Below, piece by piece: positions 35,051 through 54,589 of a stretch of 64,000 nucleotides of DNA. The position numbers and the translations under genes are program-made. The notes beneath the pieces were generated by a model. It was not told the DNA's origin. It did no database searches and worked only from the letters and a program-made list of their open reading frames with translations. The first letter of the stretch is position 1. Each line of letters opens with the position of its first letter. Location of the stretch: the sequence record OZ195934.1. One strand, given 5' to 3'.

Positions 35051-35740
35051 ATGAATCGTAAACTTGCACTTGTAGCTGCATTTGCAGCATTTGCAATGAC
35101 TGGCTGTAATGATGTTACACTCGCAACAACAACAAACGATAAAATTGTTGCAGTGCGTGATGTTTTAAATCACGAAGAATCTGTTATGATTAATCGCTGG
35201 CTTCAATTAGCAAGTGGCGATTCGTACTTGTACGATGATATGTGGGCTGCGCTTGCAACTCGTAACAAGTATGGCGGTACGTCAAATAAACGCGCAGACT
35301 CAGAACTACCATTCTGTGATGTGATCGAGGGTGTCGTAAAGAGTGAAAAACGTATACGTGATTCATTCAAAGGCACGTTGTCTAATCAGTGGAAGACGAA
35401 ATACGGTTTGACTCTTGCTCAACAGTGTGATTACACGCCACCACTGACGAAGAAAGAAAAAATGGCGTTGCTTGAAGAGCGAGAAATCGATCTTAAACTT
35501 GAAGACGCATCACCGAAGCCAACAACGATGAACGAAGTCGTTGATTCGGTTAACACGTTGCTTGACCCGCATGAGTATGACTATCTGATTGAGTCTGCGC
35601 GTGAGTGTAAACGTGCTAAGGTGAAGTTGTTGAGTCTGACTAACGTAGGTCAACCATTGACGATACAAGACGGTGACGACGCTCGTAAGCTAATCATCGA
35701 ATGTAAAATGCACAAACTAGAAGTGGAATTGAACAAATGA
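35051..35740 (+). CDS. Predicted lipoprotein, paralog of 51674-52393
   Basis: Signal peptide with lipobox MTGC; PFCDVI, QW..KYG.TL..QC, C.RAK.KL, C.MH.LEVELNK. Confidence 0.8.
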   Translation: MNRKLALVAAFAAFAMTGCNDVTLATTTNDKIVAVRDVLNHEESVMINRWLQLASGDSYLYDDMWAALATRNKYGGTSNKRADSELPFCDVIEGVVKSEKRIRDSFKGTLSNQWKTKYGLTLAQQCDYTPPLTKKEKMALLEEREIDLKLEDASPKPTTMNEVVDSVNTLLDPHEYDYLIESARECKRAKVKLLSLTNVGQPLTIQDGDDARKLIIECKMHKLEVELNK

Positions 35741-36525: not shown

Positions 36526-36566
36526 AGCCCTCCTAAATATGTCATATAATCATATGCAGGAGGGCT
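36526..36566 (+). promoter_or_regulatory. Late-promoter candidate inside an SD-sequestering hairpin
   Basis: AGCCCTCCT (36526-36534) / AGGAGGGCT (36558-36566) perfect inverted repeat covering the SD; CTAAATA at 36533-36539. Confidence 0.75.
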
Positions 36567-36570
36567 ACGC

Positions 36571-37104
36571 ATGCCAATGCAAACATCGGGAGCTATTTCC
36601 CTTAACGATATCAAAACATACTTTGGCGGTGATACGTCTGTCCCGATGAACTCATATTATCGAGGTGGCGCGTACATCCCCGACATTACAGAAAATGCAG
36701 CAATACCTACGTCTGGACAAATCAGTATAAACAACTTCTACGGCGCTATGCGTCTAACTGCGGTTGATACTACTCGCAACACGAGTCGAAGCACTGATAG
36801 CACACGAACAACGTCGTATACGACTAGCTGGACTAGTTCATGGACGACTACATGGCAAACGAAGCGCGGTTCGTCGAGATCTACAGGTTATACAACTACA
36901 TGGTCAACAAGTACAGGCTGTGGTAAGGGTGTATGTGGATCTCAGAACACGAGTCGAAGCACATCAAGATCGACCGGTTACACAACATATTGGTACACGA
37001 GTCGAACTACAAGTCGAGGGACGAATCGCGGTACCGCTCGAAGCACAGCATATTCGTATACTACTACATGGTCGACAACATTCTCGACTCAAACACCGGA
37101 ATAA
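36571..37104 (+). CDS. Thr/Ser/Arg/Trp-rich period-4 repeat protein; predicted long beta-hairpin fibre/adhesin with an N-terminal attachment domain
   Basis: N-terminal domain with duplicated TSG.IS..(D/N) motifs, then TSRS/TSWT period-4 repeats mirrored around GCGKGVCG. Confidence 0.8.
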   Translation: MPMQTSGAISLNDIKTYFGGDTSVPMNSYYRGGAYIPDITENAAIPTSGQISINNFYGAMRLTAVDTTRNTSRSTDSTRTTSYTTSWTSSWTTTWQTKRGSSRSTGYTTTWSTSTGCGKGVCGSQNTSRSTSRSTGYTTYWYTSRTTSRGTNRGTARSTAYSYTTTWSTTFSTQTPE

Positions 37105-37106
37105 TC

Positions 37107-37316
37107 ATGACAGAAAGTGAGAAAAACGAGCTACAACGGCTCAATAATGAGGTGAATCGTTTGAATGAAGTTTGTGCTAACTTACAAGAAAGTCAAACGA
37201 TCATCCTTGAAACTATAATTGACCACATCGCGTCGCTAGATGCAGACCGCGATACATTATTGCGTAGTTACGACGATGCGATTCAACGTATCATCGATAA
37301 GCACAGTGGTGAATAA
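37107..37316 (+). CDS. Small coiled-coil protein (possible assembly partner)
   Basis: ELQRLNNEVNRLNEVCANLQE heptad pattern; 2 nt after the fibre gene stop codon. Confidence 0.7.
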   Translation: MTESEKNELQRLNNEVNRLNEVCANLQESQTIILETIIDHIASLDADRDTLLRSYDDAIQRIIDKHSGE

Positions 37317-38165
37317 ATGTTACATGAAATTCGTGAAGAGACTCAGGGGTTTAATAATGCGTGTCGTATAGGCACGCTTGTTCTCAGTGATCATAAGCCG
37401 TACGATTCGTGCTTCGAAGCACTTGAAATATTACGCTCAAATGGATATCCGTGTAACTTCGATATCAATCATGACAATGGCGGCGGGTTTAGTACGAATG
37501 AATGGGTGTCTCAGTTAAGAGCATTTTCCGTTCGCTATATGAAATCCTCTGTTCATACAAAAGCACTTGTTCAGTCATTCTATGACAATGAGCATGATCA
37601 TGTAATCGAGCTGCCGAAACGCGGGGACAAATACAAGCTAAAATCACTTGCTCCTTGTTTCAAGCAATACAATCGAATCGTGTTCATTGGTGGTACTAAT
37701 CTGATTCATTCACATATGGATTTAGACAAGATTGATGTCATTCTTGACATGGATTCTAGTGTCGTGATAAAGCCACACCCACTTACAAATGTACAAGACA
37801 TGAAAATGTTGACCGAGCGTTATGGTAAAGGTCGCGTTCTGTACAACAAATTGAATGGGATCGAATTGCTGCAACAGTGTGAGCGTGCATGGATCCCCGT
37901 CTCGTCTGAAATGTGGTTCACTTGTGCCTTTTTAGGTATCCCGTACGACACGATCACGAAGTCTGACTACGAGATTGGTGGCACGTACTACGCGATGTTA
38001 GAAGCAATGAAGATCATTCAACGTGACACTAAGTTGCCGATGAACGTCATCGCGTCGCGAATCATCACATCACCAACGTCTGGTATATACACGTCGATGT
38101 ATGCATTCAAACAAAACTATCCCAACTTCATTGCGAATGTTCAATCACATGGTGGGCGCGTATGA
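37317..38165 (+). CDS. GT-B glycosyltransferase-like protein (capsule biosynthesis KpsC/KpsS-like)
   Basis: VVIKPHP motif followed by LLQQCE...SS...FLGIP, typical of the C-terminal Rossmann domain. Confidence 0.55.
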   Translation: MLHEIREETQGFNNACRIGTLVLSDHKPYDSCFEALEILRSNGYPCNFDINHDNGGGFSTNEWVSQLRAFSVRYMKSSVHTKALVQSFYDNEHDHVIELPKRGDKYKLKSLAPCFKQYNRIVFIGGTNLIHSHMDLDKIDVILDMDSSVVIKPHPLTNVQDMKMLTERYGKGRVLYNKLNGIELLQQCERAWIPVSSEMWFTCAFLGIPYDTITKSDYEIGGTYYAMLEAMKIIQRDTKLPMNVIASRIITSPTSGIYTSMYAFKQNYPNFIANVQSHGGRV

Positions 38166-38806
38166 TCAATTTAGACATCCATACTTTAATTTCAAGTGAG
38201 GCGCAAGTCGATTCACTTATAATGTTCAGCACGTCGTTTCGATTGCATCACGCAGATAATGCAGGGGTCATTAAATGCGTCGTTCTCCCGCCAATCGATA
38301 TAGAATCATTACCGTCAATTGATGGCGTGGATTATGTTCGAACATTCACATCCAAATACGTATTCTTGTCAGTCGATAACTTTTTCATCAATAAGATCTA
38401 TGCTGTGTATAGCGCACATCGAGACCGAAACTCAATTCGTAGCTATTTCAATGATGATGAATCGACAGACTTCATGATCGTTAATGATAACGATGGCGAA
38501 GATGTTGAGAATATTCATATGAATATCAATTTCAGTTTTGACAGTCATGGGGATCGAAATGATTACTATAAACGACTGGTTCAAATGAAAGACGTGGTAA
38601 GCATCAACACTAAGAAATTCAAGCTGACCGACCGAACGCAAATAAACAGTTTGTACACTTTACTGTTCCCATGGGAGACTTACTTCGACTCGATGCGACG
38701 AGCAACTGGTCTAAGTGAAGAGTTTATCAGTGATGTGATGTTCAATTGTCAACGATTTTCACATGGCATTGTATATCGCCATAGTGGTTTATTAAATGTG
38801 AGTTAA
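38162..38806 (+). CDS. Hypothetical protein in the modification cluster
   Basis: 214 aa, translationally coupled; no motif recognised. Confidence 0.7.
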   Translation: MINLDIHTLISSEAQVDSLIMFSTSFRLHHADNAGVIKCVVLPPIDIESLPSIDGVDYVRTFTSKYVFLSVDNFFINKIYAVYSAHRDRNSIRSYFNDDESTDFMIVNDNDGEDVENIHMNINFSFDSHGDRNDYYKRLVQMKDVVSINTKKFKLTDRTQINSLYTLLFPWETYFDSMRRATGLSEEFISDVMFNCQRFSHGIVYRHSGLLNVS

Positions 38807-38808
38807 TT

Positions 38809-39495
38809 ATGAAAGAAGTTATATTGATATCAGGTCTAGACAGCATCGTTTTGTATGAAATGCTAAAGTCGGCTAGTCCGAATCTCATTCCAGTTTATTT
38901 CAAATGGGGATTTGACATTGATGACGCGGAAATCAAGATGCTGCCGTCCGGTACTAAAATTCACGAAGTCCCTGAATGGATGCAATTTGACACCGATGGC
39001 AAGCTTGGTGGGGATGAGTGTATCAACTTAGATGGGCGTGATACGATCATGATGAACTTGGTTATGCACATCTACAAGCCGTATGTTATCTACAAAGGCA
39101 CGATTGCAAACGACACGTCATATGTGGAATCTCATGTTGAATTTACTGAGAAAATAAGTAGAACGTGGCGTCTTATCAACAGACACGAGTGTGACATTAA
39201 ACATCCGTTTATAAAGAAGACTAAGCGTGATATTATCGCGTATGCTAACAAGCTCGGAATTGACGCACGTGATTATCAATATTGCTACAATGCTGTGGGT
39301 AATTGTGGCGTATGTAATAAGTGTCGAATGACTCGATTATTGAGTATGTATTCCGACAATCCTGACGTTGAATTTTTACGCAGTTATCTTGGTGAGTGTC
39401 AAAAATCAGCGACGAAGAAAATCGGCGACTACTTGGTGTCGGGTGATGTCGTCGAAGAACTAACAACTTTTTTAAGGAAGTATAATGAAAATTGA
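38809..39495 (+). CDS. QueC-like PP-loop ATP pyrophosphatase
   Basis: N-terminal ILISGLDS (degenerate SGGxDS), PF...TK..I, and C-terminal Zn site YC......CGVCNKC. Confidence 0.75.
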   Translation: MKEVILISGLDSIVLYEMLKSASPNLIPVYFKWGFDIDDAEIKMLPSGTKIHEVPEWMQFDTDGKLGGDECINLDGRDTIMMNLVMHIYKPYVIYKGTIANDTSYVESHVEFTEKISRTWRLINRHECDIKHPFIKKTKRDIIAYANKLGIDARDYQYCYNAVGNCGVCNKCRMTRLLSMYSDNPDVEFLRSYLGECQKSATKKIGDYLVSGDVVEELTTFLRKYNEN

Positions 39496-40156
39496 ACATC
39501 ATTTGATTGATGGACGTGATTTGATTGTTATTGATGATGCGTTCTCAAGCGCAGATCTTAGCACAATATCACACGTCATTCATGGGATCACTGACGCTCA
39601 TTGGGCTGAGGGGCACGACGAAAACTTGCTTCGATATTCAGGCATTCATGCCATGAACGTAGATGCAGGAACGGACAGTGCAGATAGCGTAATTCGCGGT
39701 GACTGTGTGTTTTTAGAAAACTTACCAGAACACGAATTTATATGTGGGTTGGTTGACAGTGCGATCATCAATGCGTTCTCTACTGTGTCTATCGTAAGTG
39801 ACGATGACAAGGCGAAGATACTAGAAGACAAGAACGAGTTTTTCTGCCGCGTGTTGCGATACATGCCTGGGTATTACGATGACTGTGCAGATGGCGACAA
39901 CTTCTTGCACACGGACATTCGACTTGGGGTGATGTTCACTCCCGTTATCAATCCAGAAGAGCCGCAAAGCACTCTTTATTACGAAGATGATAAATTCGAA
40001 ACGCCTGTCCTGACACTCGATCACAAGCCCGGTCGTTTAGTTGTGTTTGACGGTCGAATTGTTCATGCTCCTAGTAAGTGTTTTAAAGTACCGCGCTATG
40101 CGATGTCGCTACACAACGACAATGATATGCGCCATTATTTGTCGAAGTTTAGATAG
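39485..40156 (+). CDS. 2OG-Fe(II) oxygenase (prolyl-hydroxylase-like)
   Basis: LIVIDDAF start, HTD...KPGRLVVFDGRIVH...R facial triad and 2OG-binding Arg. Confidence 0.85.
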   Translation: MKIEHHLIDGRDLIVIDDAFSSADLSTISHVIHGITDAHWAEGHDENLLRYSGIHAMNVDAGTDSADSVIRGDCVFLENLPEHEFICGLVDSAIINAFSTVSIVSDDDKAKILEDKNEFFCRVLRYMPGYYDDCADGDNFLHTDIRLGVMFTPVINPEEPQSTLYYEDDKFETPVLTLDHKPGRLVVFDGRIVHAPSKCFKVPRYAMSLHNDNDMRHYLSKFR

Positions 40157-40162
40157 GTTATT

Positions 40163-41056
40163 ATGAGTTCAATCGAAAGAATAGCTGATAAAATGATTCA
40201 CATTTATGATGATGGAATCAAGCGTGCGCAGTGGTACTTTGGTAGTCGAACTCATGACTTTTATCTGTACGGTGTCGGTGAACTACTTGACGTAGTTCGC
40301 CAGTACCCATTCATTGACATGCAGACTAAGCCAGTGGGTACGCTTGTTAAACGTGGCGAGCCTGCGATTGTTGTTACTATCAACTCAAACGAATTGTTGC
40401 AATATGGCAATATGATCGAGACGTTGATTTACAATCGTATTTGGTATGCGTCAACCGTTGGTACAATTCTGCATAACATGCGCGATCATTTGCATTCGAA
40501 TGGATTTGATGTTTATCGTGCATTTCCTCAGATGGGTCGTGCAAGTGTCAATGAACATCAAACGAAAGTTGCTAGTGACATTTTCAGTCGTGTATTTTAC
40601 AAGCTCAATGATTCGCTACGTTCAGTTGCGACTCATAATGAAATACTCATGACTAGTGAGACGTTTTGTATTGAAAACTATCATAGTGTGATGGCTGATA
40701 CGTACGACATACGCGAGTTTTGTAAACTTGCAAACTCACTGAACTATTCAGGTGAGATTATGGTTGATTCTAAGCCAATCATTGATAACATTGAATACGT
40801 GCTATCAGAAACGCCTAATACGGTATGCCAAGTTGAATCAGTGACACGAGAGGAATGGTACGACATTGTTACTCATTTCAGTGGGAATGAACGAGTGCTA
40901 TTCGGAATTGGTAGTTGTTGTTTTACGAATGTGAATAGAGACACGCTTGGGTTCGTGTACAAGACGTGCGCGATACATCGAGGCGACGAGTGGATTGCTG
41001 TTAGTAAGCAGACTAAAAACAAAGAAACATTCAGTGGTTATGTAGAGGAATTGTGA
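40163..41056 (+). CDS. Hypothetical alpha/beta protein in the modification cluster
   Basis: 297 aa, coupled to the radical SAM gene; family not recognised. Confidence 0.7.
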   Translation: MSSIERIADKMIHIYDDGIKRAQWYFGSRTHDFYLYGVGELLDVVRQYPFIDMQTKPVGTLVKRGEPAIVVTINSNELLQYGNMIETLIYNRIWYASTVGTILHNMRDHLHSNGFDVYRAFPQMGRASVNEHQTKVASDIFSRVFYKLNDSLRSVATHNEILMTSETFCIENYHSVMADTYDIREFCKLANSLNYSGEIMVDSKPIIDNIEYVLSETPNTVCQVESVTREEWYDIVTHFSGNERVLFGIGSCCFTNVNRDTLGFVYKTCAIHRGDEWIAVSKQTKNKETFSGYVEEL

Positions 41057-42060
41057 TGAAGAAATACTGCATGGCGCCATTTGCGTCACCTGCAATCACG
41101 CCAGACGGATTTAAGCTGTGCTCATATCCCGGTCAGAAAGTGTACGACGATTTGAGCTTCTGGAATAGTGAAGAGATACAAGAACTGCGCAGGATCATTC
41201 GTGACGGCGGAACGCCCGAGTCGTGTGCTGCGTGTATGGCGTCACGTGATGGGATGTTAATTACGCACAACGTGCATGAATTACGCGATGATTACGTTCC
41301 GATCAATTTTAAGAACTTGTTCATTGCGAGAAGCAATAAGTGTGATTATGCATGTGAAATGTGCTCGTCATCAATATCGCATTCGTACGACAGGATGTTC
41401 AATGACGGTAAGATCGGGATTGTTGAGAACAATTTTGACTTGACTCCGTATCTGCACGAGACTAGACACGCTGCTATTTCGGGTGGAAACCCTGTTTTAG
41501 ATAAAAAACTCATTGAAATAATCGACCAGCTTGATGTTGATCGTCTGGAATCTATGTTCTTCACTAGTAACGGGTCGGTATTCCCAGATGCGTTTTTAGA
41601 TTCAATCAAGCGATTGGAGCGTACTGACATCAGCTTGATATTTTCAATTGACGGCCCACAAGAATACAACGAAAGCGTTCGTATCGGCTGTAAGCAATCT
41701 CGTTTTTATAGCACAGTTAAGAAAGTAATGGAGCGTGTTCGTGACAATTCGAACATTTATACATGCTTCGAATTCACTGCTACTAACACGTCGATTACTA
41801 AAATGGCAGAAATGTATGATGAAATAATCATGACTCTGACTAATGAAGAGCTGTCACGCATCAAATTTGTGTTCAATACATGTTCATTTCCGCATTCGAT
41901 GTCATGTTTCAACTTGAGCAGTGAACAGTATGCTACCATCGAGGTGCAAATTGCATACTTTGAGTCGATTATGCGAACATCGCCACAGCATTTAACTGAA
42001 GCGATTCTGAAGAGACTCCGTGAGTACAAAGAACGCTACGACTCGCAGCGAATTTTATAA
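41053..42060 (+). CDS. Radical SAM enzyme with N-terminal twitch/SPASM-like Fe-S domain
   Basis: CMAPF...LC...CAAC, then SNKCDYACEMC (CxxxCxxC), SGGNP, TSNGS, FSIDG. Confidence 0.9.
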   Translation: MMKKYCMAPFASPAITPDGFKLCSYPGQKVYDDLSFWNSEEIQELRRIIRDGGTPESCAACMASRDGMLITHNVHELRDDYVPINFKNLFIARSNKCDYACEMCSSSISHSYDRMFNDGKIGIVENNFDLTPYLHETRHAAISGGNPVLDKKLIEIIDQLDVDRLESMFFTSNGSVFPDAFLDSIKRLERTDISLIFSIDGPQEYNESVRIGCKQSRFYSTVKKVMERVRDNSNIYTCFEFTATNTSITKMAEMYDEIIMTLTNEELSRIKFVFNTCSFPHSMSCFNLSSEQYATIEVQIAYFESIMRTSPQHLTEAILKRLREYKERYDSQRIL

Positions 42061-43149
42061 TATAATTGACTGATCGATGAAAGACAGTAACACAGGGGAA
42101 GACTTTTCTAAGTCTTCCCTTTTTGCTTTCTGCAACGTCTCTTTACAAAATGCGAGCCAATTCACGTGTGAGTATTTCGAGAATGATTGAACAGACTTCA
42201 ACTCATTCAACACGCGTCTGTTTGCAGTGCAATCGTCTGCGTTTTGCATTACCGAAATTGAGTGTTTCATGAAGTCTGGGTGCGCGTTTGACATAGCCAT
42301 ATTCGTCGGCATTGATATGAACCCAATTCCAATCTCAATGTCAGGGAACGCACTCGTCAGTTCAGGGAATCGCTCGATGTTATACAGTGTAATCGTAGCA
42401 AGAAGAGACACATCGTACATGCTACGATAAGTCTTCGCCTTGCTAATGAACTCACAAAGCCGATTGTAGTTGATGAATCGTCGCTGCACGTTGTTCACAT
42501 CTTCAACACCATCGATTGATATAACCAATCTAACGTGCTTGCCTGACATGTGCAGGTTGAACATATGAGTGAAGAAATCGCTACCATCCCGCATCGTAGA
42601 TGAATTACCATTTGTTACGATGGTCACTTCGTTTACATCGGCATCAATCAGAGATTCTACAAGTTCAGTCCCGCGCTTCATATCCTGCAAATTACCACCA
42701 AGTATTCGTATCGTATCTGCACCAGTCACATCATTGATCGATTGTATACACTCATCGATATTGTCGATGTTTTGAATCTGTTCTGGGTTGTATTGTTTCG
42801 AATACGTTCGAGAAAACTCGTCGCCACACATTATACACGCGCCTGAACACTCATTTGACGGGTACAATATCAAATTGCGCACATCGCTGACTGATACATT
42901 GGTTGAAATTACCGCGTTGTCTTGTTGGAATCGATGTTGTAGATCAGATGAAATACAATACTTGCACGAATCGGGTAGGTCATCGAATCGATGTTCGATC
43001 ATTGCTTCACGCACGTCAGTGATTGTTTTGTTGTTTAATGCGCTTGATGCGTCAGTGTCATTGTAGCGTATGTATGACATACAGCATGAGCTATATGATT
43101 CAGCGGCAATCCCGAAGTCAGTGAATGGGGCAGTGCAAAGAGGTTTCAT
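42055..43149 (-). CDS. Radical SAM enzyme with N-terminal twitch/SPASM-like Fe-S domain
   Basis: CTAPF...SCC...CKYC, SNECSGACIMC, LGGN, VTNG, ISIDG. Confidence 0.9.
   Translation of the reverse strand: MKPLCTAPFTDFGIAAESYSSCCMSYIRYNDTDASSALNNKTITDVREAMIEHRFDDLPDSCKYCISSDLQHRFQQDNAVISTNVSVSDVRNLILYPSNECSGACIMCGDEFSRTYSKQYNPEQIQNIDNIDECIQSINDVTGADTIRILGGNLQDMKRGTELVESLIDADVNEVTIVTNGNSSTMRDGSDFFTHMFNLHMSGKHVRLVISIDGVEDVNNVQRRFINYNRLCEFISKAKTYRSMYDVSLLATITLYNIERFPELTSAFPDIEIGIGFISMPTNMAMSNAHPDFMKHSISVMQNADDCTANRRVLNELKSVQSFSKYSHVNWLAFCKETLQKAKREDLEKSSPVLLSFIDQSIIL
42096..42124 (+). terminator. Rho-independent terminator for the + strand operon, lying within the convergent radical SAM gene
   Basis: GGGAAGACTT-TTCT-AAGTCTTCCC-TTTTT, perfect 10-bp stem. 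Confidence 0.8.
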
Positions 43150-43185
43150 AGTTTATTCTCATAATATTCGATGTATAATTAATTC

Positions 43186-43192
43186 TATTTAG
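43186..43192 (-). promoter_or_regulatory. Late-promoter candidate CTAAATA
   Basis: Reverse strand reads CTAAATA, 37 nt upstream of the 43149 start codon. Confidence 0.5.
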
Positions 43193-43202
43193 CGGGGTTT
43201 AT

Positions 43203-44126
43203 ATGAACCGAATAGCGTCATTCAATCGAGTCGATTCGTCATACGATTACATAACAGATAACGGGCTTGCCAATGTCCCGACAGTATTACAAGCACTGTA
43301 CAATATGATGATTGCGACTGATCGCGATGTTGAATACGGAGTTTCAACTGACAGAACCGACGTTCTGTATCTCGGTATATGTTTTGTTGAATATTCATAC
43401 AACACAGATCGCGAACATTTTAACGATGTCATACGCATGATTGGATCGTCGAATCGCATTGTGATTGTGTATAACTCATGGCAGGTCAAGGGTGCATTGA
43501 AATGGATTCGCGATAATGTCAATCTGAGTTCTTCGCTTGAGCGTGTACTCTCCGCTGATATTGCACTTGCACCGTTATATGAAAATCACGACGTTGAGTT
43601 GATAGAGCAAACATTCGGTCATCGCGTGTTGACATACAACCCGTCGATGCATATTGATTGCAAAGACTACGGGACATTTACTCGAAACAAAAAACGACAA
43701 GTTGTGTATGGAGAGCTTGATATGAATCTCGCGTCTACGTTTACTCAACGTTTCAATATACCAGAATCAGAATTCTTGATGTTCAATTTCAAAAATGTCA
43801 TACACGAAAAGCTGTTAGTTGAAAAGTATTACAGCGAGTCGTGGTTTGTTTTGATGCCGTCTCACTTGGGTGATACGTGCGGTATGGGTTTCTGGCGTTC
43901 GAAAGTACAACACGCGATTAATGTAGGCTCGATAATCATCACCGATGAGCATGAATATTGCAATCTCGGTGAAGCATTTCGCTATACGTACGACGACGTT
44001 CGCTGTATGAGCGACGACGAGCTTTTAGCGGTAGCACATGAACAATGTATCGCGTTTGAAATGAACCTCTCAGAGACGCGTACGCTTGCGAATTTCGACC
44101 AACAATTGAGGAGTATCAGCTTGTGA
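43203..44126 (+). CDS. GT-B glycosyltransferase-like protein resembling T4 beta-glucosyltransferase
   Basis: KKRQVVYG and FWRSKVQHAINVGSIIITDE recall T4 BGT KKTLDVIYGG and RVWETMASDAVMLIDE (alignment from memory, not computed). Confidence 0.5.
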   Translation: MNRIASFNRVDSSYDYITDNGLANVPTVLQALYNMMIATDRDVEYGVSTDRTDVLYLGICFVEYSYNTDREHFNDVIRMIGSSNRIVIVYNSWQVKGALKWIRDNVNLSSSLERVLSADIALAPLYENHDVELIEQTFGHRVLTYNPSMHIDCKDYGTFTRNKKRQVVYGELDMNLASTFTQRFNIPESEFLMFNFKNVIHEKLLVEKYYSESWFVLMPSHLGDTCGMGFWRSKVQHAINVGSIIITDEHEYCNLGEAFRYTYDDVRCMSDDELLAVAHEQCIAFEMNLSETRTLANFDQQLRSISL

Positions 44127-45457
44127 GTAGAATCACATTAGCAATTCCGATGGCTGGGATGGGTAGTCGAATGGGTGCGATATCAGAAATCGTACCGAAA
44201 GGTTTGATCAACTATCACAATCACACATTCTTGTATCACATTTATCGTTATTATGAAGACGCGTTCGACGAGTGTGTAGTTACCGTGAACTCGAAATTCA
44301 GACCGATGCTTGAGCAGTACGCAGAGAACTTCAATCTGACGCTGACTATAATCAATGATGATACGTATGACGGTAACTCGAACATTCTGCATCACTGTAA
44401 AGGCGATGTGATCTTGAACTGGTGCGATGTTGTCCCGGTTGACGTTGACGTTCGCGACTTGAAATCAGGCGTCACGGTGTTCACTAAAGACGGTACGGGT
44501 CGTTTCGTCTACGATAACGGGGTAACTGAAGTTTCAACTGACTCTGGTGATTTCTGTGGGATATACGCGATACGCGACTGTGAATATGACATCGTTAATG
44601 GTGATTTCGTAGATGTCATGATCGCGAATAACTTTGATGTTGATTTGCGCGAGTGTGATGTCGTTGATCTCGGAAGCTTTGATAAGCTTTCTTTGACGCA
44701 AGACACGCTACCGACTGCGAGATATTTCAATGAAATCACATACCACGACGGGGTGATTCGAAAGCGTGCAGTTGGCGACGAGCTTAGTCGATTCAAAATA
44801 TCTAGAGAGATTGAGGTATTAAAGGAAGGGCGCGTTGGTTACGTTGAATTGATTGATCATGATGATGATTCATATACCATGCCAGTCTTGTACGGAACGA
44901 TGCCGACTCGGCTAACACCGCCTATGATCAACAAGGGTGATGATGTCAGCGAAGATGATATTCGCGTCGAAATATCTGAGCGAGTTCTATCTAGAATCGA
45001 AAGCATCACTGAATATACGCACATTGATATTGATGAGCTGCGCGTTAAGTTGCATGAACTTGAATCGTATGTGATAGAAAATACTCATGCTTTCTATGAC
45101 ATACACGGTGATATGATTTGCGACAACGCGTTCGATACTGACAATGGGGTTGTGTTTATTGACCCGCGTGGTTACTTCGGTAATGGAACACGCGGGCCGA
45201 TTGAATATGACACGAGCAAGTTTCTATACAGTGTTAACGGTTACTTTGATTTCAATTACAACGTCATGTACGACGGTGATTTCGAGAAGTACGACAATCA
45301 CAGTGAAATGTCATTGCTTGAAGAAGCATGGGTCGCGACTCACTGGCTTGCATTGGCAGGATTCTTCAAGAACAACCCATCGAAAGCAATTGGTGCATAT
45401 CACATTGGTATGAACAAGTTGTGTCGTTTCATCGCGACTCTAAGCGCGTCTCGTTGA
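44123..45457 (+). CDS. Nucleotidyltransferase fused to an APH/choline-kinase-like domain
   Basis: IPMAGMGSRM...PKGL N-terminal NTase signature, WCDV, and C-terminal HGD...N...FIDPRGYFG kinase motifs. Confidence 0.85.
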   Translation: MSRITLAIPMAGMGSRMGAISEIVPKGLINYHNHTFLYHIYRYYEDAFDECVVTVNSKFRPMLEQYAENFNLTLTIINDDTYDGNSNILHHCKGDVILNWCDVVPVDVDVRDLKSGVTVFTKDGTGRFVYDNGVTEVSTDSGDFCGIYAIRDCEYDIVNGDFVDVMIANNFDVDLRECDVVDLGSFDKLSLTQDTLPTARYFNEITYHDGVIRKRAVGDELSRFKISREIEVLKEGRVGYVELIDHDDDSYTMPVLYGTMPTRLTPPMINKGDDVSEDDIRVEISERVLSRIESITEYTHIDIDELRVKLHELESYVIENTHAFYDIHGDMICDNAFDTDNGVVFIDPRGYFGNGTRGPIEYDTSKFLYSVNGYFDFNYNVMYDGDFEKYDNHSEMSLLEEAWVATHWLALAGFFKNNPSKAIGAYHIGMNKLCRFIATLSASR

Positions 45458-45972
45458 TTAACGTCGCGCTCAACTAGTATGCACTTCACACCTGCGCAGT
45501 TGTCTTCAACGTCGCGTATATTATCGATACGGTCATCAATGAAGTATTCAACGTTGTCTATTTCATTGATGTACTTTGACTTTGATTCATGAAACTCGAT
45601 GCTGATCAGCTCGTCAATTAGAGTCGGGAACAACGCATTTAAGTTGAATTGTCTATTGCACCATGCAGTGCGACTCCATCCGAACTTGGTAAGCGCGATT
45701 ATCTTGTGCGTCTTTGCTAATTCGGTAAGGCATTCTAAAGCATCTTCATACGCAGGCATGTATCTCGCGCTTGCGTGTTCAGTATAGGCGCCCATCAGCT
45801 TACCAATTTCACTATTCGATGCATTGACGAACATTTCACTTGCTCTAATGTCAGTCGGTATCAGTGACAAGTCGTTGAGCTTGTGTGCCATCCCGATATC
45901 ATTCATGAAAAACGGAAGATTCGATTTCCAATTCAAAAGTACCCCATCTACGTCAATTACTATCGTTTTCAT
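45400..45972 (-). CDS. HAD-superfamily phosphatase / nucleotidase
   Basis: IDVDGVL (DxD), ALT, SK, FIDD motifs I-IV. Confidence 0.9.
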   Translation of the reverse strand: MKTIVIDVDGVLLNWKSNLPFFMNDIGMAHKLNDLSLIPTDIRASEMFVNASNSEIGKLMGAYTEHASARYMPAYEDALECLTELAKTHKIIALTKFGWSRTAWCNRQFNLNALFPTLIDELISIEFHESKSKYINEIDNVEYFIDDRIDNIRDVEDNCAGVKCILVERDVNQRDALRVAMKRHNLFIPM

Positions 45973-45995
45973 TATAAATATCCATGTAAATAAAG

Positions 45996-46002
45996 TATTT
46001 AG
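45996..46002 (-). promoter_or_regulatory. Late-promoter candidate CTAAATA
   Basis: Reverse strand reads CTAAATA, 24 nt upstream of the HAD start codon. Confidence 0.5.
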
Positions 46003-46032
46003 AATTTTTTTTGATTTATTTTCATTTTGTTG

Positions 46033-46128
46033 TTGACAGATGTTGTAGAAAATGTAATTATGTATACATCAGCTCAACACTGAAACAACAAACAAAACAA
46101 ACAAAACAATCTTTAAAAGGAAGATAAC
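46033..46128 (+). promoter_or_regulatory. sigma70-type promoter with A-rich leader
   Basis: TTGACA 46033-46038, TAATTA near 46055, AAAAC repeats, AGGA RBS. Confidence 0.55.
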
Positions 46129-46314
46129 ATGAAAACATTAAAAACAATCTCTCTAGCAGTATTACTTACATTCGCATCAGCTTCAGCATTCGCAGGCGGC
46201 ACTATGGGTGGTAACCCTGGCTTCGAAATGTGTAAGATTGGCGCTATCAAATGTGGTGTACCGCTTAAAACTGAAACCCCGAAAGCTGACACTACTGAAG
46301 TTAAAACTAAGTAG
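46129..46314 (+). CDS. Small secreted peptide with a Cys pair
   Basis: Sec signal peptide ending AFA, mature GGTMGGNPGFEMCKIGAIKCGVP...; strong RBS. Confidence 0.7.
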   Translation: MKTLKTISLAVLLTFASASAFAGGTMGGNPGFEMCKIGAIKCGVPLKTETPKADTTEVKTK

Positions 46315-47420
46315 TGACTAGAATTCTGATAAACATGTCGCTTGCAAACATTGGTGATGCGCTAATATGCGCCAAATCTGCACTGAAGTTTGCAAGCACA
46401 TTACGAGAAAATCAGCAATCATTCAAGGTTGAACTATACTACAATAACTCACTATTTGAAAATCAAATGGTAGATGTGTTGCGCGGTCTAGTTGAACATC
46501 ACCATCTCCATACGTGTGTTGATGTCGTCACTGACTGTCAGCACTCGCCTGATATATACATCAGACCATCATTCGGTCACTGTCACACAGAAGTTGAAAA
46601 CACATTTACACAAGACACACGCACATTTGGCGCACAATTAGACGATTGTGAGCGTGATTATAATGTCGTGTACGACTTACGACTATTCTCCTTAATCCAC
46701 GCACCGCTGTGGGCGGCAGAGAATGAGCTATATCGTCGCGTCATGCGTGATGTGTTTGATATTGATAGTGACAGTCTATACTCGTTTGATACGTTCGGTG
46801 CACGCGTAGATCGTCAGAAGAAACATAATATTCTAGTTCATCTTAGTGAGCGCGGTTCGTCGCTTCGCATGGAGAATTCGAAGTTTGTCGATTTTATACG
46901 AGAGTACAGTAAGGTCGCAGACGAAATGCCACGCGTGACGTTTACGGTTCATAAAAACATTGACAATGTGCGTGCAGTCGCAGCCTCAATTGACAATGAT
47001 GTTGAATTGGTAGAAATGACGCTGTTCGACTTGTCTCGTCACATGCGCGATAATGTCGATCTCGTAATCACGAATTCGTGTGGTGTTCTCCACGTGGCAG
47101 GTGCATTCGGCGTGAAAACAGTCGAATTGTCGAACACGGATGATGTGTGGCACCCTATTCGTTGGCAACCACCATCATGCGCGAATAGCCATTTCTTGGT
47201 ATCCGCATTCCCGGGATGGGAGCGTAACATCAATTTCGAGCGTGCAGCCAATGGCGTAGTTACGTGGATGAGCGACGATTCGTGCTTGATGAGTCACATC
47301 AACAGCGGGATGCGTTTAACTCACGATACAATATGCAAGTCGTTATGTGACGAAGTAACAGTTCATGAGCGATGTGCATATACAATGACAATCGATGCCT
47401 TGTATAAAACGAAATTTTAA
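46314..47420 (+). CDS. GT9-like glycosyltransferase (heptosyltransferase fold)
   Basis: NIGDAL at the N-terminus and DLVITNSCGVLHVAGAFGVKTV...RWQP, matching the GT9 DSG..H.A.A motif. Confidence 0.8.
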   Translation: MTRILINMSLANIGDALICAKSALKFASTLRENQQSFKVELYYNNSLFENQMVDVLRGLVEHHHLHTCVDVVTDCQHSPDIYIRPSFGHCHTEVENTFTQDTRTFGAQLDDCERDYNVVYDLRLFSLIHAPLWAAENELYRRVMRDVFDIDSDSLYSFDTFGARVDRQKKHNILVHLSERGSSLRMENSKFVDFIREYSKVADEMPRVTFTVHKNIDNVRAVAASIDNDVELVEMTLFDLSRHMRDNVDLVITNSCGVLHVAGAFGVKTVELSNTDDVWHPIRWQPPSCANSHFLVSAFPGWERNINFERAANGVVTWMSDDSCLMSHINSGMRLTHDTICKSLCDEVTVHERCAYTMTIDALYKTKF

Positions 47421-47497: not shown

Positions 47498-49057
47498 ATG
47501 CAAAAATTAAATAAAGTAACACAAGCAATCGGTCAAATTCAAAACATCGGAACAGGCACTAACTTCATTGGTGCGTCAACTAACATCGTAACGGCAGTTG
47601 ACAGTTATAAAGTCTCACACTGGTCACAATTCCCACGCGGTCTTGAGATCAGCCAATATTACGTCGAAAGCCGAGGCGGCAAGTTCGACAAGATTATGGT
47701 CGATGGTATTGCACGCATGTGTCGTATTCTCGAAAAGGGTGTTTCGAAAGGTGATGTAGCGTATGCGAAGCGATTGTTCAAGAAGCACTTTGGTTCTGAA
47801 GTGTTCAATGACAAGGGTTTTGATATCATCGTCAACGAACTGAACGGCAAACTGCCAATCAAGATTCGTGCGGTGAAAGAGGGCATCGTCGTGCCGACAA
47901 AACACCCAATCTTGACAGTTGAGAACACGGATTCACGTTTCGGCTGGTTACCCGGTTATCTTGAAACGTTCGTCTTGCGTGCTATCTGGTACCCGACTAC
48001 AGTAGCGACTATTTCGTTTGAAGTTAAGAAAATCATCCGCCAGTACATGAAGAAGACTGTAGATGATGAGCTTATCCCTCAACTCGAACCGTTTAAGCTT
48101 CACGACTTTGGAGCACGTGGTGTCTCTAGTGCAGAATCAGCAGCGATTGGCGGCTCTTCTCACTTGAAAAACTTTTTAGGCACTGACACGGTAGAAGCAC
48201 TGGTTGACGTTGAAGAGCTTTACGGCGATGATTTAGAAGATTTCATCGCGGGATTCTCTATCCCTGCACGTGAGCACTCAACAACAACAATCTACAAGAA
48301 AATGGGCGAAGACCTAGCGTTCTTGAACTCGATTGACCAATGGGGTGGCGGTCTATACGCTTGTGTAATGGATTCATACGATTACGAAGCAGCTATGGAA
48401 CGTGTATCAACTGGTCGATTCAAAGAACTGATCATCAGTAAAGGCGGAACGTTCATCGCTCGTCCTGACTCTGGTGTGCCAGTAGATGTAGTCATGAAAG
48501 GTCTAGAAATTCTCGGTAAGAACGTTGGCTACACAGTCAATAGCAAGGGCTACAAAGTGTTACACCCTAGCTACCGCATCATTCAAGGTGACGGTGTGAA
48601 TATCGAAGAGATTCGCAGAATCTTAGACTTCATGGAAGCTAAGGGCTGGTCTGCGGAAAACATTGCATTCGGCATGGGCGGTGGTTTGCTTCAGCAATCT
48701 GACCGTGATACTCAACGATTCGCAATGAAAATGTCAGCAGCAATCATCAACGGTGAATACGTTTCTGTGTTCAAGATGCCAAAGACTGACCCAAGCAAAG
48801 CTTCTAAAGCGGGATTCTTGGATCTTATCGCGGTAAAACCAGACGAGCCAAACCCAGCCGCACGCGGTTATGTTACTGTCTCGACTGAGAGCTATGAATC
48901 ACGCGTACACCCGAACAGTGTTATGGTGACTGTGTTTGAAGATGGTGAAACAGTTTACGACTTCTCACTTGCAGAAGCGCGCCACTTCTCTGACGAACAA
49001 GCGAACTTTCTTAACGAAGGCGAGTGGAAAATCAATAAAAAGCCATTAACGGCTTAA
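47498..49057 (+). CDS. nadV: Nicotinamide phosphoribosyltransferase
   Basis: DSYKVSH, HDFGARG, GTD, SIPAREHS, DSYD, RPDSG, QGDG, FGMGG.LLQ..RD. Confidence 0.96.
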   Translation: MQKLNKVTQAIGQIQNIGTGTNFIGASTNIVTAVDSYKVSHWSQFPRGLEISQYYVESRGGKFDKIMVDGIARMCRILEKGVSKGDVAYAKRLFKKHFGSEVFNDKGFDIIVNELNGKLPIKIRAVKEGIVVPTKHPILTVENTDSRFGWLPGYLETFVLRAIWYPTTVATISFEVKKIIRQYMKKTVDDELIPQLEPFKLHDFGARGVSSAESAAIGGSSHLKNFLGTDTVEALVDVEELYGDDLEDFIAGFSIPAREHSTTTIYKKMGEDLAFLNSIDQWGGGLYACVMDSYDYEAAMERVSTGRFKELIISKGGTFIARPDSGVPVDVVMKGLEILGKNVGYTVNSKGYKVLHPSYRIIQGDGVNIEEIRRILDFMEAKGWSAENIAFGMGGGLLQQSDRDTQRFAMKMSAAIINGEYVSVFKMPKTDPSKASKAGFLDLIAVKPDEPNPAARGYVTVSTESYESRVHPNSVMVTVFEDGETVYDFSLAEARHFSDEQANFLNEGEWKINKKPLTA

Positions 49058-54320: not shown

Positions 54321-54589
54321 TAGTTTAACTCATCTAGCAGTGATTGAAATTCTTCGTCACGCGCAGCATCAATTGTGCCATTCATGAGTGCTTCAAGAGC
54401 CGATAGAGATTGAATCTCTGGTGCTTTTGGTCGAAGATCTTCGAGAATGTGAATCAACGATTCTTGTGGTAAATCGTTATACACGATTTCGTCTGGTAAT
54501 TCGTGTTTGTAAACACAGCCATCACCCCAATCGATTACGACTGCGTGTTCCCATTTGTCAATTTCTAGTATTTTAAAGTTCGGTTTCAT
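54320..54589 (-). CDS. Small acidic hypothetical protein
   Basis: 89 aa, coupled between the GT4 and radical SAM genes. Confidence 0.7.
   Translation of the reverse strand: MKPNFKILEIDKWEHAVVIDWGDGCVYKHELPDEIVYNDLPQESLIHILEDLRPKAPEIQSLSALEALMNGTIDAARDEEFQSLLDELN

What the first reader, a model, noticed from the sequence alone, without database searches (positions are those of the whole stretch)
36526..47420. Candidate phage RiPP-like / virion post-translational modification cluster built around the zipper protein
Seen: the zipper gene heads a translationally coupled run of coiled-coil protein, KpsS-like GT, unknown, QueC-like PP-loop enzyme, 2OG-Fe(II) oxygenase, unknown and radical SAM. This converges on a second radical SAM gene, followed by a BGT-like GT, an NTase-kinase fusion, a HAD phosphatase and a GT9. 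Established: SPASM/twitch radical SAM enzymes form aromatic-to-basic side-chain C-C crosslinks in RiPPs (StrB Lys-Trp, RrrB Arg-Tyr); 2OG oxygenases hydroxylate residues; GTs can O-glycosylate Ser/Thr. Inference: the enzymes staple the cross-strand Arg-Trp/Tyr pairs and/or hydroxylate and glycosylate the Ser/Thr face, producing a heavily modified virion appendage. I cannot name a characterised system with this organisation.
Basis: partly seen in the sequence, partly recalled or inferred. Interest (0 to 1): 0.9.

Follow-up and report, generated by a model that had tools for sequence, protein, structure and literature searches.

The report
Phage fibre-protein glycosylation gene island
A KVP40-like Vibrio phage carries a tightly packed enzyme operon. 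Its conserved core is a Thr/Ser-rich fibre-associated protein paired with a KpsC-like glycosyltransferase, a pair that recurs next to tail-fibre genes in many unrelated phages. This points to virion protein glycosylation, not the RiPP-style crosslinking first proposed.

Summary
The gene run is real. The window matches Vibrio phage D483/6E35.1a (Straboviridae) at 100% identity, and the block is conserved in KVP40-like phages.

There are three exceptions:
- The second 'unknown' is a truncated NAMPT-family protein.
- The 'BGT-like GT' has no detectable homology to anything.
- 'GT9' is only a weak GT-B signal.

The RiPP/crosslink reading is not supported. The radical SAM (rSAM) enzymes carry an N-terminal twitch domain and no RRE. 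In these phages they always sit beside glycosyltransferases.

The new result is a three-gene cassette:
- a small protein with a ~60-aa N-terminal domain and a Thr/Ser/aromatic-rich tail (the 'zipper');
- a short coiled-coil protein;
- a GT-B enzyme with the K-x-H-P motif of KpsC-type transferases.

This cassette recurs at the tail-fibre/neck junction of unrelated phages that lack the other enzymes. Among 80 IMG/VR loci with the N-terminal domain, the transferase accompanies 9 of the 10 Thr/Ser-rich versions and 0 of the other 70 (p = 4e-11).

Most likely the transferase O-glycosylates the fibre-associated protein. The vibriophage-specific enzymes (Cap9-like QueC, 2OG oxygenase, NAMPT-like protein, two rSAMs, HAD, kinase-nucleotidyltransferase) would then tailor the glycan. 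None of this has been tested biochemically.

The parts
36526..36566 (+). Stable RNA hairpin whose 3' arm is the zipper gene's Shine-Dalgarno sequence. The loop holds TAAATA/TATAAT-like boxes.
   Evidence: Folding gives -24.4 kcal/mol, z = -4.46, and 0 of 200 shuffles fold as well. Sequence read. F86 and KVP40 have TAAATA-containing boxes about 40-50 nt upstream of their start codons.
36571..37104 (+). 'Zipper' protein, 177 aa. It has a ~60-aa N-terminal domain shared with small proteins encoded just after tail-fibre genes, followed by a Thr/Ser/Arg/Trp/Tyr-rich tail.
37107..37316 (+). 69-aa coiled-coil partner. In some metagenomic homologues it is fused to the N-terminus of the transferase.
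   Evidence: Equivalent small coiled-coil genes occur in DLP_6, L053, L038 and Cr30.
37317..38165 (+). GT-B glycosyltransferase-like protein, 282 aa ('X282'), with invariant K-x-H-P, G-x-N and S-E motifs. Its nearest relatives are KpsC/KpsS-type (Capsule_synth) transferases.
38162..38806 (+). 214-aa protein of unknown fold ('X214'). It is found only in KVP40-like phages and in one 95-kb IMG/VR contig (L038), always directly after the transferase.
38809..39495 (+). Short QueC-family ATP pyrophosphatase, closest to CBASS Cap9. It is a second paralogue; the canonical QueC is elsewhere in the genome.
39485..40156 (+). 2OG/Fe(II)-oxygenase-like protein, 223 aa. Absent from KVP40.
40163..41056 (+). 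Truncated NAMPT/NAPRTase-family protein, 297 aa.
41053..42060 (+). Radical SAM enzyme with an N-terminal four-Cys twitch-like domain (rSAM1).
42055..43149 (-). Second radical SAM enzyme of the same family (rSAM2), convergent with rSAM1.
43203..44126 (+). 307-aa protein of unknown function. Present only in the 6E35.1a/D48x clade and F86.
44123..45457 (+). Sugar-1-phosphate nucleotidyltransferase-like N-terminus fused to a probable APH/choline-kinase-fold kinase.
   Evidence: The H-G-D-x4-N motif was read.
45400..45972 (-). HAD-family hydrolase, a homologue of T4 30.2. Kept next to the island in KVP40, F86 and D479.
46129..46314 (+). 61-aa conserved small protein. An exact TATAAATA box lies upstream at 45973-45980.
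46314..47420 (+). Present in only 7 of the 18 phages compared in PMC12028318.

Best explanation
The region is a phage glycosylation island built around a mobile three-gene cassette.

**The cassette.**
- The first gene encodes a small fibre- or neck-associated protein. Its ~60-residue N-terminal domain probably anchors it to the virion, and its Thr/Ser/aromatic-rich tail is the acceptor.
- The second gene encodes a short coiled-coil partner.
- The third encodes a GT-B glycosyltransferase with the K-x-H-P motif typical of enzymes that use CMP-activated ulosonic acids (KpsC/KpsS, sialyltransferases).
- The transferase most likely O-glycosylates the Thr/Ser-rich tail, giving a mucin-like glycoprotein on the particle.

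**The vibriophage additions.** In KVP40-like vibriophages the cassette has moved from the fibre/neck junction into the plastic early-strand region. There it is fused into one operon with tailoring enzymes:
- an unknown 214-aa protein (X214);
- a Cap9-like QueC-family ATP pyrophosphatase, which would form amide bonds on a carboxylate, possibly a 7-deazaguanine carboxylate;
- a 2OG oxygenase;
- a truncated NAMPT-like protein;
- two N-terminal-twitch rSAM enzymes;
- a HAD phosphatase.

The V. crassostreae clade adds a sugar kinase-nucleotidyltransferase and one or two further GT-B-like proteins. These would supply and elaborate the sugar.

**Shown:** gene content, homology, and co-occurrence of the cassette parts.

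**Inferred:** that the zipper is the acceptor, the nature of the sugar, and that the extra enzymes act on the same product.
For: **1. The transferase looks like a GT-B enzyme of the KpsC type.**
- There are 154 family representatives, with invariant K152-x-H154-P155, G126-x-N128 and E198.
- The best PDB sequence hits are KpsC, over the HP-motif region.
- Family members hit Capsule_synth, GT52 and polysialyltransferase models.
- The AF2 model has pLDDT 76 and pTM 0.77.
- Its Foldseek hits are almost all GT-B transferases, including KpsC, the WaaA CMP-Kdo domain, SdgB and GtfA. Viral GTs and a 'capsule polysaccharide biosynthesis protein' also appear.

**2. The pairing with a Thr/Ser-rich protein is specific.**
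- In 9 of 10 loci with a transferase homologue, the ORF with the densest S+T content in all six frames lies directly upstream of it.
- Among 80 IMG/VR loci holding the zipper N-terminal domain, the transferase is present in 9 of the 10 with a tail of S+T >= 0.40. The tenth runs off its contig.
- It is present in 0 of the other 70. Fisher p = 4e-11.

**3. The cassette belongs with fibres.**
- N-domain homologues follow tail-fibre genes in RTH11, JC1, BUCTxx99 and DLP_6.
- The cassette lies between fibre and neck, holin or terminase genes in Quill_5.2, Cr30, DLP_6, L014, L016-18 and L053.

**4. The coiled-coil protein is fused to the transferase** in P0012 and P0021.

**5. The operon is tight and stays together.**
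- The block is collinear from D483 to KVP40.
- It stays contiguous in D479 despite rearrangement.
- L038 keeps zipper, coiled coil, transferase, X214 and an rSAM.
- The block is lost as a unit in nt-1 and in K566/K567 (PMC12028318).

**6. The rSAM family travels with GTs.**
- The K566 replacement island runs rSAM-GT8-rSAM-rSAM-GT4-like-rSAM-GT8.
- A third rSAM in this window sits beside a GT4-like gene (annotation).
Against: - No biochemical or proteomic evidence exists for glycosylation, or even for the zipper being in virions.
- The transferase's similarity to KpsC is marginal (E 0.01; Foldseek E 2e-3 to 5e-2; TM about 0.3), because the N-terminal half of the model is poor.
- In DLP_6 the protein upstream of the coiled-coil/transferase pair is fibre-like but not especially Thr/Ser-rich.
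- QueC-like, NAMPT-like, 2OG and rSAM genes are missing from most cassette-bearing lineages, so their link to the zipper rests only on operon structure within one phage group.
- In KVP40-like phages the cassette lies on the early strand among non-structural genes. Published virion mass spectrometry lists none of the island's annotated proteins.
- The authors of PMC12028318 read the island as anti-defence.
Confidence: 0.42

Rival explanations
1. **Anti-defence / auxiliary-metabolism patchwork** (the reading in PMC12028318). The genes are independent counter-defence or metabolic modules collected in a plastic region:
- a QueC paralogue for 7-deazaguanine DNA chemistry, or as a Cap9/QatC mimic;
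- a NAMPT-like protein for NAD+ reconstitution alongside NadV;
- viperin-like rSAMs.

On this reading the zipper is unrelated.
For: - PADLOC hits: QueC model at E 2.8e-9 and pVip at E 2e-6.
- NadV lies immediately downstream.
- The phage does make dPreQ1 DNA.
- The island is swapped for a different one in K566/K567.
- The region is a run of small early-strand genes.
Against: - The canonical QueC sits with FolE about 60 kb away.
- Start and stop codons overlap throughout the operon.
- The transferase and zipper form a cassette tied to fibre genes elsewhere.
- The NAMPT-like protein lacks the NAMPT_N domain and about 85 central residues.
- The pVip hit is weak, and the rSAM family is defined by an N-terminal twitch domain that viperins lack.
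Confidence: 0.2
2. **The first reader's model.** A RiPP-like system in which the rSAM enzymes staple Arg-Trp/Tyr pairs of the zipper, the 2OG oxygenase hydroxylates it, and the GTs glycosylate it.
For: - The rSAM core resembles peptide-modifying enzymes (CteB, SkfB, YydG, SuiB) about as well as it resembles small-molecule enzymes.
- The zipper heads the operon.
- A Cap9-like enzyme is a known protein modifier.
Against: - No RRE/PqqD-like domain and no C-terminal SPASM domain. The auxiliary Cys domain is N-terminal and matches the twitch domain of BtrN, a carbohydrate enzyme.
- 7 of the 9 cassette-bearing IMG/VR loci have no rSAM.
- The Caulobacter phages, L014 and L015 have none within the sequence examined.
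- Zipper-like partners vary from 1% to 9% Arg.
- The rSAM family co-occurs with GTs where no zipper is present.
Confidence: 0.06
3. **DNA hypermodification.** The island elaborates a modified base in phage DNA, for example by decorating the aminomethyl group of dPreQ1 or attaching sugars, as T-even phages do with hydroxymethylcytosine.
For: - 15% of dG is dPreQ1 in 6E351A.
- The QueC paralogue keeps the residues that contact the deazaguanine in Cap9: R77, Y105, E/D and L74 in the alignment, read.
- A phosphoribosyltransferase-like protein, a HAD phosphatase and GTs are the kinds of enzyme seen in nucleoside pathways (my own knowledge).
Against: - The published DNA mass spectrometry reports dPreQ1 itself and mentions no heavier adduct.
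- Transferase homologues sit in fibre/neck modules of phages without any deazaguanine genes nearby.
- No DpdA/TGT-like gene is in the island.
Confidence: 0.1
4. **Host envelope remodelling.** The enzymes alter host LPS or capsule during infection (superinfection exclusion, or release from debris), with lipid or glycan acceptors rather than a phage protein.
For: - KpsC/KpsS relatives normally extend lipid-linked Kdo.
- The K566 replacement island carries a PagP-like gene, lipid A genes and a lipoprotein.
- There is a weak heptosyltransferase signal in the 368-aa protein.
Against: - This does not explain the near-perfect pairing of the transferase with Thr/Ser-rich versions of a fibre-linked protein.
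- It does not explain the cassette's place in structural modules.
Confidence: 0.1

Closest known systems
Mycobacteriophage virion glycosylation (phage-encoded GTs decorating capsid and tail-tube subunits; Freeman et al. 2023, cited from my own knowledge)
   Same: Phage-encoded glycosyltransferases lie near structural genes. The acceptor is a Ser/Thr-rich extension of a virion protein.
   Different: Different GT families and different hosts (Gram-negative here). Here the acceptor is a dedicated small protein with its own anchor domain. No experimental proof exists here.
KpsC/KpsS beta-Kdo transferases (Capsule_synth PF05159, GT107), and the HP-motif sialyl- and polysialyltransferases
   Same: GT-B-type fold, invariant K-x-H-P motif, and best sequence and fold matches.
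   Different: The phage protein is a single ~280-aa unit that falls below the Pfam threshold. The known enzymes act on lipid or glycan acceptors, not on a Thr/Ser-rich protein. The donor sugar here is unknown.
Serine-rich-repeat and SD-repeat adhesin glycosylation (GtfA/GtfB, SdgA/SdgB), and flagellin O-glycosylation with nonulosonic acids
   Same: A dedicated GT-B enzyme is encoded beside a low-complexity Ser/Thr-rich surface protein. The weak FlmC-family hit of the 2OG protein and the PP-loop enzyme recall nonulosonate tailoring.
   Different: Homology is at fold level only. Those are bacterial systems with export machinery.
Cap9 of type IV CBASS (QueC-family enzyme that joins 7-carboxy-7-deazaguanine to a protein N-terminus)
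   Same: Best solved relative at E 1.6e-5, aligned end to end. It matches the PADLOC CBASS-QueC model. The base-contact residues and the Zn cluster are conserved.
   Different: There is no CD-NTase, Cap10 or Cap11 nearby. The PP-loop reads SG[LI]DS, one residue shorter. It is encoded by a phage, not by a defence system.
rSAM/SPASM RiPP maturases (StrB, RrrB, CteB, SuiB)
   Same: Radical SAM core and an auxiliary Fe-S Cys cluster.
   Different: The auxiliary domain is N-terminal and twitch-like. There is no RRE and no leader/core precursor logic. The genomic partners are GTs.

Membership tests
rSAM-dependent RiPP system | Maturase carries an RRE (PqqD-like) domain, or a separate RRE protein is present | tested here: not met
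   Pfam and NCBIfam scans of every island protein found none.
rSAM-dependent RiPP system | C-terminal SPASM/twitch auxiliary-cluster domain | tested here: not met
   The four invariant Cys (C6, C23, C58, C61) are N-terminal. They match the BtrN twitch domain at E 2e-4. The best NCBIfam model is NF033640, the twitch domain-containing rSAM family.
rSAM-dependent RiPP system | Precursor and maturase co-occur across genomes | tested here: not met
   Zipper-like genes occur without an rSAM in 7 of the 9 cassette loci and in the Caulobacter phages. The rSAM family occurs without a zipper in nt-1 and K566.
Capsule_synth / KpsC-KpsS (GT107) | HP motif in a GT-B nucleotide-sugar domain | tested here: met
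   K152-x-H154-P155 is invariant in 65 sequences. It aligns to the KpsC HP motif. The predicted fold is GT-B.
Capsule_synth / KpsC-KpsS (GT107) | Score above the Pfam PF05159 gathering threshold | tested here: not met
   The window protein gives no hit. The Quill_5.2 homologue scores 19.8 bits against a threshold of 20. Only 2 of 65 family members hit at E <= 0.01.
Capsule_synth / KpsC-KpsS (GT107) | Uses CMP-Kdo as donor | not testable with these tools
   The donor is only inferred from the motif.
QueC family (PF06508) | Pfam domain above threshold, and the Zn-binding Cys cluster | tested here: met
   42.6 bits against a threshold of 22. C159, C166, C169 and C172 are invariant.
QueC (preQ0 synthase, equivalog TIGR00364) | Equivalog score and a canonical SGGxDS PP-loop | tested here: not met
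   32.6 bits against a cutoff of 150.3. The loop reads SG[LI]DS in all four orthologues. A canonical QueC exists elsewhere in the genome.
Type IV CBASS Cap9 | Operon with a CD-NTase and the TGT-like Cap10 | tested here: not met
   No such genes in the island or the window.
NAMPT/NAPRTase | Complete catalytic core plus the NAMPT_N domain | tested here: not met
   PF04095 scores 27.6 bits against a threshold of 20.8, but only two segments align to NAMPT structures. hhalign to the phage's own NadV covers 37-295 against 107-442, with long gaps. NCBIfam equivalog cutoffs are not reached.
2OG/Fe(II) oxygenase | HxD...H facial triad | tested here: met
   H142, D144 and H194 are invariant in three orthologues. 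Family hits are sub-threshold: FlmC at E 9e-5 and PhyH at E 7e-3.
T4 beta-glucosyltransferase-like GT (the 307-aa protein) | Any detectable similarity to BGT or another GT | tested here: not met
   No hit in Pfam, NCBIfam, PHROGs, PADLOC or PDB sequences.
GT9 heptosyltransferase (the 368-aa protein) | PF01075 above threshold | tested here: not met
   12.6 bits against a threshold of 22, E 0.08. The Epimerase_2 hit at E 1.3e-3 also points to a GT-B-like C-terminal half.

The most novel reading that the evidence does not exclude
The island makes a nucleobase- or nucleoside-bearing glycoconjugate on a virion protein. The proposed route is:

1. The phage's own 7-deazaguanine pathway supplies 7-carboxy-7-deazaguanine.
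2. The Cap9-like enzyme joins it by an amide bond to an amine on the zipper protein or on its glycan.
3. The NAMPT-like protein and the HAD phosphatase add and trim a ribose at N9.

This would be the first phage-side use of deazaguanylation, and a new class of virion decoration.
Probability: 0.07. Interest if true: 0.9.

Novelty: new variant of a known kind. Interest (0 to 1): 0.6.

Why it matters
Phage-encoded glycosylation of virion proteins is documented, to my knowledge, only for mycobacteriophages.

A conserved, portable acceptor-plus-transferase cassette at the fibre/neck junction of many Gram-negative phages would matter in three ways:
- Glyco-decoration of phage particles would be much more widespread than known.
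- A large family of unannotated proteins would gain a function: 154 transferase clusters and 319 N-domain relatives in IMG/VR.
- There would be a concrete target for understanding how particles interact with host surfaces, mucus or immune recognition.

The finding also flags a gene missed by current annotation of a well-studied oyster-pathogen phage collection. It shows a Cap9-like QueC paralogue in a phage, outside any defence system.

Tried and rejected
**Searches that found nothing or little:**
- Word-indexed protein searches for the transferase and X214 returned only near-identical proteins. An alignment query returned six.
- Pattern scans for the transferase and the NAMPT-like protein in IMG/VR found only KVP40.
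- The NAMPT-like protein was not found in GTDB genomes.
- Two single-protein scans found nothing.
- Three alignments were too diverse for the scanner.
- PDB sequence searches found nothing for X214, the 307-aa protein, the 368-aa protein or the zipper N-domain.
- Literature searches for the rSAM family name and for KVP40 expression timing gave nothing usable.

**Structure prediction:**
- A single-sequence AF2 model of X214 failed, with pLDDT 30. It was not used.

**Ideas rejected:**
- That the island's QueC is the phage's preQ0 synthase. A canonical copy sits with FolE elsewhere.
- That the phospho-histidine of NAMPT is conserved in the truncated paralogue. hhalign does not align it.
- That the zipper region is merely a DNA repeat. 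Only one weak 12-nt array is present, and the N-domain is under purifying selection.

I also recalled generic family motifs (PP-loop, CxxxCxxC, HxD...H) and the T4 late-promoter octamer. Only the octamer went into a tool. No conclusion rests on the recalled NAMPT fragments.

Full report
**Origin and observation.** The window is a stretch of a KVP40-like myovirus. The finding's region is 100% identical to Vibrio phage D483 and to 6E35.1a (Straboviridae; host Vibrio crassostreae), and 99% identical to a dozen sister isolates.

They are packed as described. Same-strand junctions are 0-6 nt spacers or 1-11 nt overlaps, and the two radical SAM (rSAM) genes converge and overlap by 6 nt.

The block is syntenic in F86 (49-65% protein identity), KVP40 (35-50%) and D479. 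KVP40 lacks the 2OG-like gene, the 307-aa gene, the nucleotidyltransferase-kinase and the 368-aa gene. Only 7 of the 18 phages compared in PMC12028318 have the 368-aa gene.

**The zipper gene is real but under-annotated.** The OZ-series records do not call it. They call a 127-aa alternative-frame ORF instead. MW824377 calls it 'putative cell wall mannoprotein'.

It is conserved in F86, KVP40 and D479. Its first 61 codons give pN 0.17 against pS 0.71 versus F86, so dN/dS is about 0.08.

**Gene-by-gene check.**
- *282-aa protein.* It has 154 cluster representatives in 1.84 billion proteins. K-x-H-P, G-x-N and S-E motifs are invariant. A family profile finds KpsC beta-Kdo transferases as its only meaningful PDB sequence hits, at E 0.01 and aligned on the HP motif. 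Individual members touch Capsule_synth, GT52 and polysialyltransferase models. The AF2 model has pLDDT 76 and pTM 0.77, with a poor N-terminal quarter. Foldseek against the PDB retrieves GT-B glycosyltransferases almost exclusively: LanGT2, SpnG, KpsC, SdgB, GtfA and the WaaA CMP-Kdo domain, at E 2e-3 to 5e-2. Against BFVD it retrieves viral GTs and a capsule-synthesis protein. 'KpsS-like GT' is therefore a fair label, at moderate confidence.
- *QueC-like protein.* It passes Pfam but not the QueC equivalog. Its best solved relative is Cap9 of type IV CBASS, at E 1.6e-5 and aligned end to end, compared with E 0.13 for QueC itself. It matches the PADLOC CBASS-QueC model over its whole length. 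In that alignment the residues that contact the deazaguanine in Cap9 (L83, R86, Y115, D117) correspond to conserved L74, R77, Y105 and E/D. The Zn cysteines are invariant. The PP-loop is one residue shorter, reading SG[LI]DS.
- *223-aa protein.* It has only weak family hits (FlmC, PhyH) but an invariant HxD...H triad.
It aligns to the phage's own NadV over the catalytic core with long deletions and has no NAMPT_N domain.
- *The two rSAMs, a third at 53265-54320, and the four in phage K566.* They form one family with four invariant N-terminal cysteines plus CxxxCxxC. The N-terminal part matches the twitch domain of BtrN. The core matches peptide-modifying and small-molecule rSAMs equally well. 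No RRE or C-terminal SPASM domain was found.
- *307-aa 'BGT-like GT'.* It matched nothing in any library.
- *368-aa 'GT9'.* It gives only sub-threshold GT-B signals.
- *444-aa protein.* It has a nucleotidyltransferase N-terminus. Its C-terminal half has an H-G-D-x4-N motif and a weak choline-kinase hit.
- *HAD.* It is the T4 30.2 homologue.

**What the surroundings and relatives show.** The zipper's ~60-aa N-terminal domain is a widespread module. In Xanthomonas phage RTH11, Burkholderia phage JC1 and Stenotrophomonas phages BUCTxx99 and DLP_6, it heads small proteins encoded immediately after tail-fibre genes. Their C-terminal parts are quite different, and no transferase homologue lies in the fetched flanks: within 6 kb in RTH11, JC1 and BUCTxx99, and not tested at that DLP_6 locus.

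Homologues of the transferase lie in structural modules of unrelated phages:
- Caulobacter podovirus Quill_5.2: T7-type tail fibre, then a 184-aa Thr/Ser/Tyr-rich protein, then the transferase, then holin.
- Caulobacter myovirus Cr30: fibre-like proteins, a coiled coil, a 116-aa Thr/Tyr-rich protein, the transferase, then neck.
- A T7-like metagenomic contig (L014), L015 and L016-18.

In 9 of 10 such loci, the ORF with the highest S+T density in all six frames is the one directly upstream of the transferase. DLP_6 is an exception: a fibre-like 492-aa ORF and a coiled coil precede the transferase there.

The sharpest test used 80 IMG/VR loci that hold the N-terminal domain (319 relatives were found). 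Ten have a tail with S+T >= 0.40. Nine of those ten have the transferase next door, and the tenth runs off its contig. None of the other 70 has it. Fisher p = 4e-11. So the transferase tracks the Thr/Ser-rich tail, not the anchor domain.

The coiled-coil gene also tracks the transferase. It is adjacent in the vibriophages, DLP_6, L053 and L038, and fused to it in P0012 and P0021.

In T4-like carriers (Cr30, DLP_6, L053) the cassette lies between the fibre genes and the neck genes.

**The other enzymes.** They are clade-restricted. Of the nine cassette-bearing IMG/VR loci, only KVP40 and L038 have an rSAM or X214, and only KVP40 has the QueC-like and NAMPT-like genes.

Three things argue that they nonetheless belong together in the vibriophages:
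- the overlapping reading frames;
- collinearity across deep divergence;
- contiguity despite rearrangement in D479, where both rSAMs moved upstream of the zipper.

L038 keeps zipper, coiled coil, transferase, X214, a 250-aa protein and an rSAM.

The block is absent as a whole from nt-1 and from K566/K567. There it is replaced by an island of four rSAMs of the same family interleaved with two GT8 genes and a GT4-like gene, plus a lipoprotein and a PagP-like gene. The third rSAM in the window also sits by a GT4-like gene. This repeated rSAM-GT pairing argues for sugar chemistry rather than peptide stapling.

**Published context (PMC12028318).**
- The canonical FolE/QueD/QueE/QueC/DpdA/QueF cluster is about 60 kb away, and 15% of dG is dPreQ1.
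- The authors call VP6E351A_0314-0326 (the transferase through the 61-aa ORF) an ancestral anti-defence island.
- Their particle proteome of 94 proteins contains none of the island's annotated proteins.
- The zipper ORF is not in their gene list, so it could not have been scored.
- The 229-aa protein encoded two genes upstream (35051-35740) was detected at low counts, and so was NadV.

**Mechanism.** The best-supported model is that the zipper-like protein is a fibre- or neck-associated acceptor, and that the HP-motif GT-B enzyme O-glycosylates its Thr/Ser-rich tail with help from the coiled-coil partner. The vibriophage-specific enzymes would tailor or supply the sugar. Gene content, homology and co-occurrence are shown. 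The acceptor, the donor and the unity of the pathway are inferred. My confidence is about 0.4.

The rivals are:
- an anti-defence patchwork (0.2);
- DNA hypermodification (0.1);
- host envelope remodelling (0.1);

**Comparison and novelty.** The nearest known systems are mycobacteriophage virion glycosylation, SRRP/SD-repeat and flagellin glycosylation, KpsC/KpsS, and Cap9. The membership tests show that the island cannot be filed under RiPPs, CBASS, canonical QueC, NAMPT, BGT or GT9. The transferase meets the motif and fold criteria of the KpsC-type family but not its Pfam threshold. I rate the finding a new variant of a known kind.

Noticed in passing
window 36526-36566: A hairpin of -24.4 kcal/mol (z = -4.46) pairs the zipper's AGGAGG Shine-Dalgarno sequence with an upstream arm. 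The loop carries CTAAATATG and TATAAT. F86 and KVP40 have TAAATA boxes at a similar distance. This resembles the T4 arrangement in which a late promoter inside a hairpin frees the ribosome site only on late transcripts (my own knowledge).
   Followed up: partly
window 45973-45980 (+): The only exact TATAAATA in the 64 kb window lies just upstream of the 61-aa ORF and the 368-aa GT-B-like gene. One match is no more than chance expects.
   Followed up: no
window 36571-37104 versus 36933-37316: The OZ-series annotation of D483/6E351A omits the conserved 177-aa zipper gene and calls an alternative-frame 127-aa ORF. Proteomic searches based on that annotation cannot detect the zipper protein.
   Followed up: yes
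window 53265-55595 (-): A third N-terminal-twitch rSAM, an 89-aa ORF and a GT4-like 340-aa protein form a module. It is kept even in nt-1 and K566, which lack the main island.
   Followed up: partly
L019 (Vibrio phage K566) 8042-20828: The island that replaces this one in K566 holds a lipoprotein, four rSAMs of the same family, two GT8 genes, a GT4-like gene, a Ser/Thr/Tyr/Gly-rich 225-aa protein, a PagP-like gene and an LpxC-like gene.
   Followed up: partly
L022-L101 (IMG/VR): The ~60-aa N-terminal domain (consensus features YYRGG and PTSG) has at least 319 relatives. Its C-terminal partners are modular. About a third of the 80 kept loci have Gly-rich tails (G about 0.3), and 37 of 80 follow an ORF of 300 aa or more. 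It has no Pfam or PDB relative.
   Followed up: partly
L008 (Vibrio phage D479) 7076-8167; L038 9947-10981: D479 and the L038 contig carry a different rSAM, with no N-terminal twitch domain and a long C-terminal extension, in place of rSAM2.
   Followed up: no
window 35051-35740: The 229-aa protein encoded two genes upstream of the zipper was detected at low spectral counts (4 and 2) in published 6E351A particles, as was NadV (47498-49057).
   Followed up: no
window 38809-39495: The QueC paralogue's PP-loop is SG[LI]DS in all four orthologues, one residue shorter than the canonical loop, while the base-contact and Zn residues are kept.
   Followed up: partly
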